A stretch of DNA of 61,663 nucleotides from Octopus bimaculoides (taxonomy: Eukaryota), in assembly GCF_001194135.2 (NCBI RefSeq), contig NC_068996.1, positions 44,256,256 through 44,317,918 of the forward strand, read 5' to 3'. The notes below the pieces were generated by a model. The model had not been told where the DNA came from and did no database searches. It saw nothing but the letters and a program-made list of their open reading frames with translations. Positions 854 through 41,632 of this stretch are shown in pieces; within the stretch, counting starts at the first letter, position 1, and each line of letters begins with the position of its first letter. The position numbers were made by a program, and so were the translations under genes.

Positions 854-1506
854 GTATATACATCTATATGTGTTTATATGTATGTACATGTATATGTGTA
901 TTTATATATTTATGTACATGTATATGTGTATTTATATATGTATGTATATGTATATATTATTGTTAAAGAGGACAACAAACATAAGTCAATGCAAATATCT
1001 CAAGTCGTATACAATATTATTAATGGAAAAAATTCAAAGTCTTAACAGTTGTTTCTGGGATATCGCCGAGTATGGGATATTCTGTCAGCAGAGACAAATA
1101 GGGAAGAATAGGGAAAATGAGAATGGTATATATTAATGAGATGACGACATAGAGGAAGGGAGTAAAAGAATAAGGGGATGCAGAGAAAGGAGGGAAAAAG
1201 AAGCATAAATGTTCATAGTTCAACTTTCCAAAGTTGTAGAAACAAGAGCATAATCCCTTAGGTGCAATCCTGTGTAAATACGTAGGATTGCACCTAAGGA
1301 ATTATGCTCATGGATCACGAGGATGTGAGTTCAAGTCTCATAGCTGGCCGACGACAGATTTTTCTGCAAAATGTAGATAGTTTATCCTTTTAATGCTATA
1401 TTATTTGAATTATCCTGCATTTGAGAATAAAATTATTTCCTTATCTTTCAATACATCTCAACGCTTCTAAAGCAAACTTTGTTGACTTTCAACGTAAGTT
1501 GAATTT

Positions 1507-5598: not shown

Positions 5599-6933
5599 TA
5601 GGGTAAAAATTAATAATTTGTTGATAATTAGTAATTTTACCAAGTAGTTCGGTGTGTTAAAAACCATTATCGGTAAATATATAAACACAATATAAAATTT
5701 CGGGTTCAGCAAATATAGCTTCACCACGCACTGAAAATTAGAAATAGCAGCCAAATAGTAGTTTTGGCTGCTATTTCTAATTTTCGGTGTGTGGTGAAGC
5801 AATACTTGCTGAACCCTAAATTTTATATACTTAGAAATGTATGTATATTTGAGCCAGTGATGGAATTGCTACATAGCAAACTAGACCTGCTAGAAATAAT
5901 AGCCAAATTGCTTCAAATCACACTGTTGACTTACAAAATATATGTACATATAAGCCAGTGATAGAATCTGCTGAAAACTTTAGCTGCCTACTTTCAAATT
6001 TGTATTCAATATAAATTTTCTTGAAATCAAAGCATGAGCCTCAATGTGGTCTTGACCAGCTAGAAATAGCAACTAAATCACCCTCAACTGATCTACTAAT
6101 ATATGTATACTAGAGCCAATAAGGTAATTGCTACATAGTAAGCTAGGTCTGCTAGAAATAGTAGCCAAATTGCCTTCAAATCACGCCTTACTGTCTTGAT
6201 ATTTCGTTTGAGTCACACCCTACAATGTGAAATAAAATAAAACATGACATAACATAAATAAAATAATGTAATCCTTGATATATATAAAGGTGGGATGGTC
6301 ACCACTGGAATGTCTTCAATCATAGGTGTAGGTGTTTGGTGCCAGACAACAACTTTTTTTTATGTCCTTGTTAAAGAGAAAATTCAAAAAAAATCTTTTC
6401 CTTCTGTCTGTTTCATTCCTGTATTTTATTCTTTCTTTTTCTTTTTTCTGTCTTCCTCTTTTTCCTTTTTCTTATATTTTTTTCTTCTTCTTTCCCTTTC
6501 TCTTTACAGTCTGACCTTCTTACTTTTGTCTTCTCTTATCTTTCCCCACCTCTTCTCCTGTCTTCCTTTTCTTTTTTACTTTGCTTTCATAATATCACAC
6601 ACTTGGATACTCGTAATTGGACACCGACTAAAGGAATAAAAGGCGGTGCTCCAGCATGGCCACAATCGAACTGACTGAAATGAGGAAAAGAATAAAATAA
6701 TACAAAGGTGCAGGCAAGTTTATGTGATTTAGGTAGGCGTTAGCCCTGGGCTAACAGTACCTAGTGAATGAATTTGGTAGACGGAAACAGAACCAATTAA
6801 GTATGTGTGTGTGTGTGTGTGCACATGTTGAACTGTTAATCCCTACAGTTCTATATTTAAGGGATGAGGAATTATGCACATTATTTACATTATTTACATT
6901 TGATGGATCTTTGTCCTCATCTTGTTTGTTGTT

Positions 6934-21596: not shown

Positions 21597-21612
21597 TATT
21601 ATTATTAATTAT

Positions 21613-22020
21613 TCCACCAAGGTTGCCTTTGCCTTTCATCTTTTTGGGGTTGATAAATTATCAATGTGATCGACAGACCCCTCCCACCAAATTTCAGGCC
21701 TTGTACCTATAACCTATAGTAGAAAGGATTATTATTATTATTATTATCATTACTATCATTATTATTACTATTATTATTATTATTATCATTATTATTTTTA
21801 TTATTAAGGTGGTGAGCTGGCAGAATTGTTAGTACGATGGTCGGAATGCTTAGTGGTATTTCGTTCATCGCTACATTCTGAGTTCAAATTCTGCTGAAGT
21901 CGACTTTGCTTTTCATCCTTTTGAGGTTGGCAAATTAAGTAACAGTTGCGTACTGGGATCAATCTTATCGACTGCCCCATCCACCAAATTTCAGGCCTTG
22001 TGCCGATAGTAGAAAGGATT
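21613..22020 (+). mobile_element. Two family D SINE copies separated and flanked by (ATT)n
   Basis: Nin-like core; tail aaatttcaggccttgtgcc.atagtagaaaggattatt. Confidence 0.7.
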
Positions 22021-29723: not shown

Positions 29724-29762
<39 letters not shown>

Positions 29763-29763
<1 letters not shown>

Positions 29764-30230
29764 TATCCTTTTTAGTATAGGCACAAAGTCTGAAATTTGG
29801 CAGCTGGGTGCTAGTCAATTATATTGACCCCCGTGCTCACTGGTACTTATTTTATTAACCCTCAAAAAGGATAAAAGGCAAAGTCAACCTTGGAAGAATT
29901 TGAATTCAGAACATGAAGCTGTAAGAAATGCTGTTAAGCATTCTGTTTGGCATACTAACGACTCTTGCAAGAAGCTGCCTAAGTAATAATTATAAAGAAA
30001 ATAATTATAATAATCATTTGTATTATAAGCACAAGACTTGGAATTTCATGGGAAGGGGGTAAGATGATTACATCAACCCCAGTGCATAACTGGTACTTAT
30101 TTTATTGACCCTGAAAGGGTGAAAGGCAAAGTTGACCTCGGTGGAATTTGAACTCAAATTGTTAAGACAGACAAAATGCTGCTAAGCATTTAATCTGGCA
30201 TGCTAATGATTCTGCCAGCTGGCTGCTTTA

Positions 30231-30264
<34 letters not shown>

Positions 30265-30498
30265 TAATAATAATAATAATGATCCTTTCTGCTATAGGCA
30301 TAAGTCCTGAAATTTGTGGGGAGGGATCAAGTTGATTACATCGACTCTAGTGCATAACTGGTACTTATTCCATTGACCTTGAAAGGATGAAAGGCAAAGT
30401 CAACCTTGGTGGAATTTGAACTCAGAGCACGAAGACAGACAAAATGCTACTAAGCATTTCACGCTCTGTGCTAACACCGGTTCTGCCAGCTCATTTCC

Positions 30499-30542
<44 letters not shown>

Positions 30543-36416: not shown

Positions 36417-37360
36417 ATATGTATGTATGTGTATATGTATGTTTGTCTATATGTGTATGTATGTATGTATGTATATGTATCTATATGTATGTATATATGT
36501 GTATGTATGTATATATATATATATGTATGTATGTATATATATATGTATGTATGTATGTATATATATATATATATGTATGTATGTATATATATATGTATGT
36601 ATGTATGTATATATATATATGTATGTATGTATATATATATGTATGTATGTATGTATATATATATATATGTATGTATGTNNNNNNNNNNNNNNNNNNNNNN
36701 NNNNNNNNNNNNNNNNNNNNNNNNNNNNNNNNNNNNNNNNNNNNNNNNNNNNNNNNNNNNNNNNNNNNNNNNNNNNNNNNNNNNNNNNNNNNNNNNNNNN
36801 NNNNNNNNNNNNNNNNNNNNNNNNNNNNNNNNNNNNNNNNNNNNNNNNNNNNNNNNNNNNNNNNNNNNNNNNNNNNNNNNNNNNNNNNNNNNNNNNNNNN
36901 NNNNNNNNNNNNNNNNNNNNNNNNNNNNNNNNNNNNNNNNNNNNNNNNNNNNNNNNNNNNNNNNNNNNNNNNNNNNNNNNNNNNNNNNNNNNNNNNNNNN
37001 NNNNNNNNNNNNNNNNNNNNNNNNNNNNNNNNNNNNNNNNNNNNNNNNNNNNNNNNNNNNNNNNNNNNNNNNNNNNNNNNNNNNNNNNNNNNNNNNNNNN
37101 NNNNNNNNNNNNNNNNNNNTGTATATATATATGTATGTATATATATATGTATGTATATATATATGTATGTATATATATATGTATGTATATATATATGTAT
37201 GTATATATATATGTATGTATATATATATGTATATATATATATGTATGTATATATATATGTATGTATATATGTGTGTGTGTATATATATATGTGTGTGTGT
37301 ATATATGTATGTATGTATTTATGTATGTATGTGTGTGTATGTATGCATATATATGTGTGT
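36370..37360. repeat. Large (TA)/(TATG) compound microsatellite with gap
   Basis: Direct reading; similar fields at 730-960, 39480-39650 and 53465-53760. Confidence 0.95.
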
Positions 37361-37510
37361 GATGGATTCTCTTATCATTAACGACAAATGAGGGTTCAGT
37401 AAAATATATCGTTAATCATGTTCTGTGGACACGAATATGTCTCTTGAAGTCTGCTGGTGCCTTGCAAACTTTTGGGTAAATGGAACAAGTTGAAGACTCA
37501 GTTTTCTTAC
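37360..37510 (-). mobile_element. Decayed RTE-type LINE 3' end (zinc-finger remnant)
   Basis: STCSIYPKVCKAPADFKRHIRVH* then a short UTR. Confidence 0.5.
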
Positions 37511-37608
37511 TCAAATAATAATAATAATCTTTTCTACTATAGGCACAACGCCTATAGTAGAAAGGTGATTGGAGGCGGCCATATATATCGCAGTCATTAC
37601 AACACGAT

Positions 37609-37662
37609 GAATGCACGGTGTCAAGTGGGCCACTTTTGGTAAGCAGAGCTGGTGATGTGGGA
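37609..37662 (+). pseudogene. 28S (LSU) rRNA fragment embedded in a SINE
   Basis: AAGTGGGCCACTTTTGGTAAGCAGAGCTGGTGATGTGGGA matches the conserved LSU segment AGTGGGCCAYTTTTGGTAAGCAGAACTGGCG(A/C)TGYGGGA (LR6 primer region) with a few substitutions. Confidence 0.75.
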
Positions 37663-38832
37663 GGTGGGGGGGCTAGTCGATTAGATCAACCCCAGTATGT
37701 AACTGGTGCTTAATTTATCGAGTCCCAAAGGACGAAAGGCAATGTTAACCTGAACAGAATTTGAAATGATGATGATGATGATGATCATGATGGATTCTTC
37801 CATTGAAGACAACATATGAGCGTTCAGCTTTTTGCCGAACGATCTGCACAAATGATTTATTTATAGTGATCAAATGTATGTGCTGAACATTAGTTCACTA
37901 CCTCCATCAAATTGACGTCTGAACAGGTGTTGAAGTGATTGCTGAGTAAAGTGAGATGGAGCGTTTTGCTCGAGAACACAATGCACTACCCAGTCTAGGA
38001 ATAGAAACCATGATTTTGCAATCATGAGTGCAATACTCTAACCATTAGGGCAACAAGAGCAGCAGCAACAACAACAACAACAATAATAATAATGATAATA
38101 ATAAGGGAAATGTGAAATAAGATAAATTTGTTCTTTGTAAGGAGATATGAATACTGATATTTTAGGCTGGGGCTATTTCAACATAATATATGTGAATGGA
38201 CCATAAAAGGCTGATGCTTGACGTATCAAGCCTGTTGGCTTAATTTAACTAGTTTGCCATATTGCTTCAAATGTTTAAGTTGCTACACACTGCTTGTTTA
38301 GCTTGATCAAACATGGGCTTTTCCGGTACTGGCATTGATGTAAAAGCACATCATGAAGATATGTACATATCACAGAGAGAGAGAGAGAGAGAATTCTAGT
38401 AGCTGTCTTTTTTCACTTAATGATTGTAAATTTAATGTTTTCATGTAAAAGATTCAACATGTCAGTTATCTAAACTGAACTAAAGAAAGAAAAAAAATCC
38501 CTGCACATGCAAACATACATACAATGAGGAATGAAAAATAACCCTCTCCCCTAATAACAAAATACAAAACAAAACCGTAAAAAAAGGAAACAGTGAAAAA
38601 AACAACCCAAAACCCCAAGTATATAAATGATGGTGTGAAACAAATCACCTTTGTAATTATGTTATGTGATTTCATTGTTTAATCATGTGACTATGTAATC
38701 TTCATGGAAAGTAACATAGTTGTGAAGATACATCAAAATGTGTAATGGATTAGCATTTAGTGGTCTACTTCCCTGTCAATGATTGCTTATCTGTCATTCT
38801 ATCTCTTCCTCTTGTCATATATATATAATATG

Positions 38833-40484: not shown

Positions 40485-41632
40485 ANNNNNNNNNNNNNNN
40501 NNNNNNNNNNNNNNNNNNNNNNNNNNNNNNNNNNNNNNNNNNNNNNNNNNNNNNNNNNNNNNNNNNNNNNNNNNNNNNNNNNNNNNNNNNNNNNNNNNNN
40601 NNNNNNNNNNNNNNNNNNNNNNNNNNNNNNNNNNNNNNNNNNNNNNNNNNNNNNNNNNNNNNNNNNNNNNNNNNNNNNNNNNNNNNNNNNNNNNNNNNNN
40701 NNNNNNNNNNNNNNNNNNNNNNNNNNNNNNNNNNNNNNNNNNNNNNNNNNNNNNNNNNNNNNNNNNNNNNNNNNNNNNNNNNNNNNNNNNNNNNNNNNNN
40801 NNNNNNNNNNNNNNNNNNNNNNNNNNNNNNNNNNNNNNNNNNNNNNNNNNNNNNNNNNNNNNNNNNNNNNNNNNNNNATATATATATATACATATATATA
40901 CATATATATATCTCTGTGTGTGTGTGTGTAGCGAGAGTGTGTTTGTATCTTCTTGTCTTGATATTGTACAATAGTTGTAGACGAGTGTCACCATCATACA
41001 AGCAGTGTCCTTTATTTCCTGTCTTATATGAGAACATATCAAGCCATGGGGTAGCATAACATTACCTTACTTGAAAATGGATGAAGGTTGGTGACTAGAA
41101 GGGCATCTGTCTGGCTGTAAGAGAAAATCTGTCTCAACAAATTTCATTCTGACTCGTGCAAACATGGAAAAGAGAATGTTAAAACAATGACAGTGGTGAT
41201 GATTAATGTGCATATATGAATGCTTGCATAGATACACACACATACACACATGCATGTATACATATATACAGACATGGACACATGCATACATATGTCGATA
41301 GGATCCTTTCAGTTTCCTTCTGCCAGATTCACTTATAAGGTTTTGGTCAGCTTGAGGCTTTAGTAGAAGGTACTTGCCCAAGCTGCCATGCAGTGGAACT
41401 GAACCTGAAACCATGTGGTTAAGAGGTGAACTACCTCTATGCCATGTCAGCATGTGGAAAAGTAAAACTAAAAAAACCCAAAACCTCAAGCGTACCTGTC
41501 TGTAGAATAGAATGGAACAATAGACGAAACAGAAAACAGTGGTTTGTGTATACAAAAGAATAAAGGAAAGGGGAACCATGTAGTATAAAGAGAAACTTTG
41601 GTAAAAAAAAATGTGGGGGGGAGGTTGTTTAA

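What the first reader, a model, noticed from the sequence alone, without database searches (positions are those of the whole stretch)
37529..37765. 28S rRNA piece captured inside a SINE tail together with a perfect fold-back
A minus-strand family D tail (tttctactataggc) folds back on itself (14-bp stem, 5-nt loop). About 45 nt of unassigned sequence follow, then ~55 nt of LSU rRNA antisense to the SINE, and the SINE resumes at a GTGGGA microhomology shared by both. This looks like a fossil of template switching onto rRNA during reverse transcription or repair.
Basis: partly seen in the sequence, partly recalled or inferred. Interest (0 to 1): 0.7.

Follow-up and report, generated by a model that had tools for sequence, protein, structure and literature searches.

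The report
rRNA-patched break scar in SINE
An old octopus SINE copy carries what looks like the scar of one repaired DNA break, where 8 bases were replaced by a short fold-back copy of the neighbouring SINE sequence plus a 60-97 base piece of 28S ribosomal RNA; it is a clear but ordinary example of a known kind of repair footprint.

Summary
A perfect 14-bp/5-nt-loop inverted repeat lies at 37531-37544/37550-37563. A real 28S fragment lies at 37603-37662 (nhmmer E=3e-14 against 22 metazoan 28S stretches) and is the only one in the window. It reads sense on the + strand, so it is antisense to the minus-strand SINE. The SINE resumes at a shared GTGGGA (37657-37662).

New points:
- Against nine other copies in the window, only GAAATTTG (8 nt) of the SINE is missing, and the SINE parts on both sides are collinear.
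- The fold-back extends a 4-bp inverted repeat native to the SINE (AGGC-N5-GCCT). It was probably 16 bp long originally.
- The "unassigned" 45 nt probably also comes from 28S, from a length-variable expansion segment (suggestive only, p about 0.06).
- An RT copying 28S rRNA would write onto the minus strand. Simple template switching during first-strand SINE reverse transcription therefore does not fit.

Best reading: a break in a resident, old SINE was repaired by snap-back synthesis on one end and 28S-templated synthesis, primed by 6-nt microhomology, on the other. This resembles class-2 templated insertions and Pol theta end-joining scars.

The kind is known and interest is modest.

The parts
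37514..37528 (-). SINE 3' tail, (AAT)5 as read on the + strand, (ATT)n on the SINE strand
   Evidence: Sequence. Tails of the same kind sit on the other copies.
37529..37553 (-). SINE 3' end retained left of the break (ATCTTTTCTACTATAGGCACAAcGCCT). It includes the native 4-bp inverted repeat AGGC..GCCT.
   Evidence: Alignment to nine window copies, consensus ATCCTTTCTACTATAGGCACAAGGCCTGAAATTTGGTGGGA. There are 2 differences from the consensus: 37530 C>T and 37549 G>C.
37531..37563 (.). Perfect fold-back with a 14-bp stem and 5-nt loop. It would be 16 bp (37529-37544 / 37550-37565) if 37530 was C as in the consensus.
   Evidence: The right arm GCCTATAGTAGAAAGG equals the reverse complement of the SINE consensus over 16 nt.
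37554..37565 (+). Newly made part of the fold-back (ATAGTAGAAAGG): an inverted copy of 37529-37540, inferred to be snap-back synthesis primed from the native GCCT
   Evidence: This stretch is absent from all nine other copies. A consensus SINE end cut after GCCT folds into exactly this terminal 4-bp hairpin (MFE -3.0 kcal/mol, 57% of the ensemble).
37566..37602 (+). The formerly 'unassigned' stretch: probably the upstream continuation of the 28S piece, i.e. the hairpin loop and 3' stem TGATTGGAGGCGGCC plus a lineage-specific expansion
   Evidence: GATTGGAG occurs at the homologous place in L012 and L013, TGATTGG in L022, and CAACAC(AC)GA(C/T)GAATGC in L026. The spacer here ranges from 3 to about 50 nt among the references. 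The nhmmer envelope reaches 37570. Statistics are weak: 18 of 200 and 58 of 1000 shuffles do as well. No donor was found elsewhere in the window.
37603..37662 (+). 28S (LSU) rRNA fragment, sense on the + strand, antisense to the SINE
   Evidence: nhmmer E=3.1e-14. Rfam LSU_rRNA_eukarya model 1125-1163. Universal primer site rd5b matched at 19/22.
37657..37662 (.). GTGGGA microhomology shared by 28S and the SINE at the right junction
   Evidence: 28S references read ...GCTGTGGGATGAACC. SINE copies read ...TTTGGTGGGAGGGG.
37663..37765 (-). SINE body right of the break, 78% identical to the local consensus. It lacks the roughly 85-nt tRNA-related head.

Best explanation
This is the scar of one break-repair event inside a SINE copy that already resided at this locus.

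Shown: a break fell within GAAATTTG, about 25 nt from the SINE's 3' tail.

Inferred steps:
1. On the left end, the + strand 3' terminus (...TATAGGCACAAGGCCT-3') folded back on the SINE's own 4-bp inverted repeat (AGGC/GCCT, 5-nt loop). It was extended by 12 nt on itself, which produced the 16-bp fold-back.
2. On the right end, the minus-strand 3' terminus (...CCTCCCAC-3') annealed through 6 nt to GUGGGA of 28S rRNA. It was extended on that RNA for at least 60 nt, and probably about 97 nt. The polymerase would be one that can copy RNA, such as a LINE reverse transcriptase acting in trans or DNA polymerase theta.
3. The two extended ends were joined at 37565/37566.

Net result: 8 bp deleted and about 103 nt of templated filler inserted, with no target-site duplication and no A-tail on the insert. 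The element has no evident function. It is a neutral fossil that has since picked up a few substitutions.
For: - Collinear SINE on both sides, with only GAAATTTG missing relative to nine other copies.
- The fold-back starts exactly at the native AGGC-N5-GCCT repeat, and its right arm matches the consensus over 16 nt. A consensus end cut after GCCT has that 4-bp terminal hairpin as its MFE fold.
- Purified Pol theta extends such self-paired ends from as few as two terminal base pairs and leaves inverted repeats in the joined product (PMC11292364; PMC8391894).
- The 28S identity is secure.
- Strand logic, read directly from the sequence: antisense 28S, the cDNA of rRNA, lies on the minus strand and continues from ...CCTCCCAC with a 6-nt overlap.
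- Microdeletion, microhomology, no TSD and no poly(A) match the class-2 templated insertions described as RNA-derived patches at double-strand breaks, 73-414 bp (PMC5110952).
- The insert looks younger than the SINE. It shows 4 changes in 72 exposed nt (28S core 3/40, fold-back 1/32), against 23/105 for the SINE body versus the local consensus (Fisher p=0.003). One of the 28S changes is CpG>TpG, as expected for resident genomic DNA.
Against: - There is no read-level, population or orthologous-locus evidence. An empty pre-repair SINE state has not been seen.
- The age contrast rests on a consensus of only nine local copies and on small counts. The 28S core alone gives p=0.053.
- The species' own 28S was not available. 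The three 'substitutions' and the 28S origin of 37566-37602 are therefore inferred from other metazoa.
- RNA versus DNA (rDNA) as the template cannot be told apart from this sequence.
- The left junction (GG|TGATT) is not a clean microhomology join.
- The polymerase is not identified.
Confidence: 0.5

Rival explanations
1. Same break-repair scar, but the 28S piece was copied from rDNA or a free rDNA/cDNA fragment (DNA) rather than from rRNA. Possible routes are microhomology-mediated replicative template switching (MMBIR/FoSTeS type) or capture of a double-stranded fragment.
For: Microhomology at the junction and an inverted segment next to a distant-templated segment are also typical of DNA-templated switching. 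With a DNA template, orientation carries no information. Nothing in the sequence, such as a processing boundary, proves an RNA origin.
Against: rRNA is by far the most abundant possible template, whereas rDNA is a distant and much rarer one (established knowledge). Patches at experimental breaks were shown to derive from RNA (PMC5110952). Simple capture of a double-stranded fragment would not need a 6-nt overlap.
Confidence: 0.2
2. The chimera arose during the retrotransposition of this SINE copy itself. The reverse transcriptase or second-strand polymerase jumped from the SINE cDNA to 28S rRNA, then to the SINE RNA 3' end, and back again.
For: LINE RTs switch templates and produce 28S/LINE chimeras (bioRxiv 10.1101/2025.02.02.635956). 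RTs self-prime by hairpin. Both insert pieces read on the minus strand as copies of sense RNAs (28S rRNA and the SINE RNA 3' end). That could fit jumps during second-strand synthesis.
Against: First-strand switching gives the wrong orientation for both pieces. A second-strand model needs three jumps that land back within 8 nt of the departure point. Known chimeras carry the foreign RNA at the 5' end and are mostly in sense. The insert appears less diverged than the SINE body. No TSD bracketing the chimera was found.
Confidence: 0.15
3. The chimera is not unique. It is one copy of an amplified SINE subfamily whose master gene acquired the fold-back and the antisense 28S module.
For: SINEs are known to gain modules by recombination with rRNA, for example 5S-derived heads (PMC4824008). 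Copy number in the genome could not be measured here.
Against: None of the nine other family copies in the 61.7-kb window has it. The 28S 23-mer is unique in the window. This copy lacks the promoter-bearing head, so it cannot itself be a master.
Confidence: 0.05
4. Assembly or gap-filling artefact: a chimeric read or mis-join placed rDNA sequence inside a SINE in this gapped draft scaffold.
For: The window has 14 runs of N, the nearest at 36679-37119. The region lies between microsatellites. Read support could not be checked.
Against: The 28S piece differs at 3 of 40 near-invariant positions, including a CpG>TpG change. Fresh rDNA contamination would not show this. The junctions show biological signatures: a 6-nt microhomology and a fold-back nucleated on a native repeat. 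A 60-97-nt island flanked by collinear SINE is not what a graph mis-join produces.
Confidence: 0.05

Closest known systems
Class-2 templated sequence insertions (RNA-derived 'patches' at repaired double-strand breaks; Onozawa and Aplan, PMC5110952)
   Same: A distant, transcribed sequence is inserted at a break, with microdeletion, junctional microhomology, no target-site duplication and no poly(A). The size is in or near the reported range of 73-414 bp.
   Different: The donor here is rRNA, the host site is a SINE in an octopod genome, and the patch comes with a snap-back inverted duplication. RNA origin is inferred, not shown.
Polymerase-theta-mediated end joining scars with snap-back (stem-loop) templated insertions
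   Same: An inverted copy of the sequence next to the break, primed from a few terminal base pairs, followed by joining through microhomology.
   Different: Typical scars are a few to about 30 nt and are templated locally. Here a further 60-97 nt come from 28S. Dependence on Pol theta cannot be tested from sequence.
28S rRNA/LINE-1 and U6/LINE-1 chimeric retrocopies (template switching or twin priming during TPRT)
   Same: 28S rRNA pieces of 50-482 nt fused to a retroelement copy.
   Different: In those chimeras the rRNA sits at the 5' end of the retroelement, is mostly in sense, and the whole is flanked by TSDs. Here it is internal and antisense, with collinear SINE on both sides.
Dispersed LSU-rRNA pseudogene fragments
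   Same: A short, decayed piece of 28S outside the rDNA. Isolated fragments of the same 28S region were also seen in metagenome contigs L005, L006 and L012.
   Different: Both junctions and the pre-insertion sequence can be reconstructed here, because the host is a repeat with a known consensus.

Membership tests
Class-2 templated sequence insertion (RNA-derived patch at a break) | Insert is templated from a distant sequence | tested here: met
   28S rRNA, nhmmer E=3.1e-14, unique in the window
Class-2 templated sequence insertion (RNA-derived patch at a break) | No target-site duplication and no poly(A) on the insert; microdeletion and/or microhomology at the junctions | tested here: met
   8 nt (GAAATTTG) deleted relative to the consensus, GTGGGA overlap, no duplication, no A-run
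Class-2 templated sequence insertion (RNA-derived patch at a break) | Donor is RNA (donor locus intact; processed features) | not testable with these tools
   The piece is internal to mature 28S, so no processing boundary is available. Only the strand logic favours RNA.
Pol theta end-joining scar with snap-back insertion | Inverted copy of break-adjacent sequence primed from a short terminal self-pairing | tested here: met
   12 nt of new inverted copy continue the native AGGC/GCCT pairing
Pol theta end-joining scar with snap-back insertion | Dependence on Pol theta | not testable with these tools
   Needs genetics. A LINE RT could do the same.
TPRT template-switch chimera (U6/L1, 28S/L1 type) | Foreign RNA at the 5' end of the retroelement copy, in the same orientation | tested here: not met
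   The 28S piece is internal and antisense, and the SINE continues on both sides
TPRT template-switch chimera (U6/L1, 28S/L1 type) | TSDs and an endonuclease site bracketing the whole chimera | tested here: inconclusive
   No convincing direct repeat flanks 37514-37765. The truncated 5' end abuts the (ATG)n run of a neighbouring element.
Twin-priming inversion | 5' part of the element inverted relative to its 3' part | tested here: not met
   Both SINE parts are on the minus strand and collinear
rRNA-containing SINE subfamily | Many copies share the same rRNA module and junctions | tested here: inconclusive
   0 of 9 other copies in the window.
Functional LSU rRNA gene | Reaches the Rfam gathering score | tested here: not met
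   No family reaches gathering in the window. The local hit is only 15.9 bits.

The most novel reading that the evidence does not exclude
The fold-back plus antisense-28S insert may not be a one-off scar. It could mark a composite SINE lineage, or a recurrent class of rRNA-templated repair patches that is unusually common in cephalopod germ lines. Octopod genomes would then carry many such RNA-templated scars, giving a natural record of RNA-templated break repair.
Probability: 0.07. Interest if true: 0.55.

Novelty: new member of a known kind. Interest (0 to 1): 0.3.

Why it matters
The host is a repeat with a recoverable consensus. The pre-break sequence, both junctions, the priming microhomologies and the direction of synthesis can therefore all be read from one locus. 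That makes it a clean natural example, in a mollusc, of a break repaired with snap-back synthesis plus an rRNA-derived patch. These processes are otherwise documented mainly in mammalian cells, flies, worms and in vitro.

It is not a new mechanism and has no evident function. Its value is as a seed for a genome-wide census of such scars in cephalopods.

Tried and rejected
- Exact look-ups of two ORFs spanning the chimera in public assemblies: not on record.
- Protein-space searches with one frame and with all six frames of the insert, hoping to hit spurious ORFs on octopus 28S or other chimera copies: nothing. A control with the ordinary SINE body found only one protein, an Octopus vulgaris hypothetical protein. 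That database therefore has no power for octopus repeats, and these negatives say nothing about copy number.
- Exact 31-mer of the focal 28S piece in metagenome contigs: 0 hits. Junction 29-32-mers in prokaryotic genomes and viral contigs: 0 hits. These collections do not hold the organism.
- Local donor for the 45-nt stretch: the longest exact match elsewhere in the window is 10 nt, below the shuffled expectation of 10-13.
- Profile test of the 45-nt stretch as 28S: the gain is small (48.3 bits against 47.2 +/- 0.8 for shuffles, 18/200; shared 8-mers 58/1000). I report it as probable, not shown.
- Twin priming, P-nucleotide-type hairpin opening (the 5-nt loop is native SINE sequence, not a perfect palindrome) and rDNA-specific R-element co-transcripts were considered and rejected on anatomy.
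- The weak snoRNA, miRNA and sRNA hits from Rfam in this region are far below gathering scores and I treat them as noise.

Full report
**Context.** The window is AT-rich, full of microsatellites and tRNA-derived SINEs with (AAT)n tails, and carries 14 runs of N. It is therefore a gapped draft scaffold. A translation of the SINE body finds one protein in the 5.8-billion-protein collection, a "Hypothetical predicted protein [Octopus vulgaris]" at 70% identity. The window therefore comes from an octopod or a close relative. No Rfam family reaches its gathering score anywhere in the window.

**The observation.**
- The inverted repeat 37531-37544 / 37550-37563 is 14/14 with a 5-nt loop. Only three perfect, non-low-complexity hairpins of at least 14 bp with a loop of at most 12 nt exist in the 61.7 kb, and none appeared in 30 shuffles.
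- The 28S identity of the centre is secure. Rfam's LSU_rRNA_eukarya model aligns 37624-37662 to positions 1125-1163.
- I fetched 27 metazoan-type 28S loci from metagenome contigs with a degenerate pattern. Four that I checked are true rDNA with SSU and 5.8S alongside.
- A profile of the 22 distinct stretches hits the window once, at 37603-37662, with E=3.1e-14. The alignment stops exactly at GGGA.
- Positions 37640-37661 are the binding site of the universal 28S primer rd5b, matched at 19/22.
- The piece is sense on the + strand and the SINE is on the minus strand, so it is antisense to the SINE as stated.

**The SINE frame.** Nine other copies of the family lie in the window. Their alignment gives, in + strand orientation: (AAT)n ATCCTTTCTACTATAGGCACAAGGCCTGAAATTTGGTGGGAGGGGG.TAAGTCGATTACATCGACC...
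- The focal copy follows this consensus up to GGCACAAcGCCT (37553) and again from GTGGGAGG (37657) to GAATTTGAA (37765). There it lacks the roughly 85-nt head and abuts the (ATG)n run of a neighbouring element.
- The two SINE parts are thus collinear and in the same orientation. Only GAAATTTG is missing, and about 103 nt take its place.
- GTGGGA is common to the SINE (TTTGGTGGGAGG) and to 28S (GATGTGGGATGAAC), which confirms the microhomology.

**The fold-back is built on a native repeat.** The consensus already contains AGGC-ACAAG-GCCT, a 4-bp inverted repeat with a 5-nt loop.
- In the focal copy, the sequence after GCCT is not GAAATTT but ATAGTAGAAAGG, the reverse complement of the 12 nt to the left of AGGC.
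- The right arm matches the consensus for 16 nt (GCCTATAGTAGAAAGG). The left arm now has T where the consensus has C (37530). The repeat was therefore probably 16 bp when made and has since taken one substitution.
- A consensus SINE end cut after GCCT has exactly this terminal 4-bp hairpin as its minimum-energy DNA fold (-3.0 kcal/mol, 57% of the ensemble). That makes it a ready self-primer.

**The "unassigned" 45 nt.** In the reference 28S sequences, the stretch upstream of GAATGC is a hairpin (…CCGGCTCGCT(C/T)GA(T/C)(T/C)GGAGCCGGGC) followed by a spacer. The spacer runs from 3 nt to about 50 nt among taxa, so it is an expansion segment.
- The focal stretch begins TGATTGGAGGCGGCC. GATTGGAG is in L012 and L013 at that place, and TGATTGG is in L022.
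- It ends CAACACGATGAATGC, compared with CAACACACGACGAATGC in L026.
- The nhmmer envelope reaches 37570.
- The formal tests are weak: 18/200 and 58/1000 shuffles do as well.
- No donor exists elsewhere in the window.
- I consider it likely, roughly 60%, that the rRNA piece is one contiguous stretch of about 97 nt (37566-37662). Only the species' own 28S can settle this.

**Direction of synthesis.** The SINE RNA corresponds to the minus strand, so first-strand cDNA made by target-primed reverse transcription is the + strand.
- An RT that jumped from SINE RNA to 28S rRNA would write antisense 28S onto the + strand. The + strand carries sense 28S, so that model fails.
- Read on the minus strand 5'>3', the SINE body ends ...CCTCCCAC and continues ATCACCAGCTCTGCTTACC.... 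This is the cDNA of 28S rRNA, and the TCCCAC overlap could pair with GUGGGA of the rRNA.
- That is what extension of a minus-strand 3' end on rRNA would produce.
- The fold-back is what self-primed extension of the + strand 3' end from the other side would produce.
- Two ends, each extended and then joined, explain the whole structure with one break. This part is inference from the anatomy.

**Comparison with known processes.**
- Purified Pol theta extends self-paired 3' ends from as few as two terminal base pairs, and the joined products carry inverted repeats (PMC11292364). It also shows snap-back replication and reverse-transcriptase activity (PMC8391894).
- RNA-derived patches of 73-414 bp with microdeletion and microhomology, and without TSD or poly(A), are described at experimental breaks and as class-2 templated sequence insertion polymorphisms. 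A LINE RT acting in trans at a break is offered as one mechanism (PMC5110952).
- 28S/LINE-1 chimeras exist (n=18, 50-482 nt). In those, the rRNA is at the 5' end and is 83% in sense; antisense cases are ascribed to twin priming.
- The present structure meets the anatomical criteria of the first two classes. It fails those of TPRT template-switch chimeras and of twin priming.

**Relative age.** The focal SINE body is 78% identical to the local consensus (23 mismatches in 105), against 78-94% for the other copies.
- The 28S core differs at 3 of 40 positions from a sequence that is near-invariant in metazoa: 16 of 22 references read ACTGGCGCTGTGGGA. One of the three changes is CpG>TpG.
- The fold-back has one change in 32 exposed positions.
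- Four changes in 72 nt against 23 in 105 gives Fisher p=0.003. The 28S core alone gives p=0.053.
- This suggests that the insert is younger than the SINE, which favours repair in a resident copy. It also indicates that the insert is old enough to be real genomic DNA rather than contamination.
- The counts are small and the consensus rests on nine copies.

- Exact-protein look-ups and protein searches across the chimera found nothing. A positive control shows that this database barely holds octopus repeat ORFs, so those negatives carry no weight.
- Scans of metagenome, prokaryotic and viral collections for the focal junctions found nothing, as expected.

**Verdict.** It is a template-switch fossil involving 28S, but most likely a break-repair scar in an old SINE (about 0.7 for repair overall, 0.5 for the RNA-templated version) rather than an accident of SINE reverse transcription (about 0.15). 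An amplified subfamily and an assembly artefact remain at about 0.05 each. It is a new instance of a known kind, of modest interest, and is mainly useful as a model locus and as a search template for a census.

Noticed in passing
window 5700-5820 (perfect core 5733-5755 / 5763-5785): A long hairpin: a 23-bp perfect stem with a 7-nt loop, inside an imperfect inverted repeat of about 55 bp per arm. It looks like a MITE-like or hairpin-RNA-like palindrome. No Rfam family reaches gathering.
   Followed up: partly
window 1240-1310 (perfect core 1256-1271 / 1284-1299): A second hairpin: a 16-bp perfect stem with a 12-nt loop, within an imperfect stem of about 27 bp. Its origin is unknown.
   Followed up: partly
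window 29747-30530: Three copies of the same SINE family lie head to tail at about 250-270-bp spacing. Each has its own (AAT)n tail, so SINEs appear to have inserted into each other's tails.
   Followed up: no
window 21600-21745 (minus strand): Another copy of the family has a small tandem duplication at the same spot as the focal fold-back (CTACTATAGGTTATAGGTAC) and an internal deletion. The TATAGGC...GCC region may be prone to slippage or breakage.
   Followed up: no
window 37766-38060 and 37364-37400: A different minus-strand SINE-like element lies immediately right of the focal SINE. It has a (CAT)n tail (read as ATG repeats) and a tRNA-like head near 37960-38050. A similar GATGGATTCT... 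start follows the microsatellite at 37364.
   Followed up: no
L005, L006, L012 (also L009, L015, L019 by eye): Metagenome contigs from some unidentified metazoan carry isolated 28S fragments (Rfam model about 670-1450 or 818-1170) in non-rDNA context, with no long ORFs. They cover the same 28S region as the focal piece, and four of the six end at the same point (...GATGAACCAAACGT). This suggests dispersed rRNA-fragment copies in that genome.
   Followed up: partly
window, 14 runs of N (e.g. 36679-37119, 40486-40877): The scaffold is a gapped draft. The nearest gap is about 410 nt left of the finding, beyond a (TG/TA)n microsatellite.
   Followed up: yes
P0001 (Octopus vulgaris annotated protein, 116 aa): An annotated 'hypothetical predicted protein' of Octopus vulgaris matches the SINE body translation at 70% identity. 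It is probably a gene model built on a SINE.
   Followed up: no
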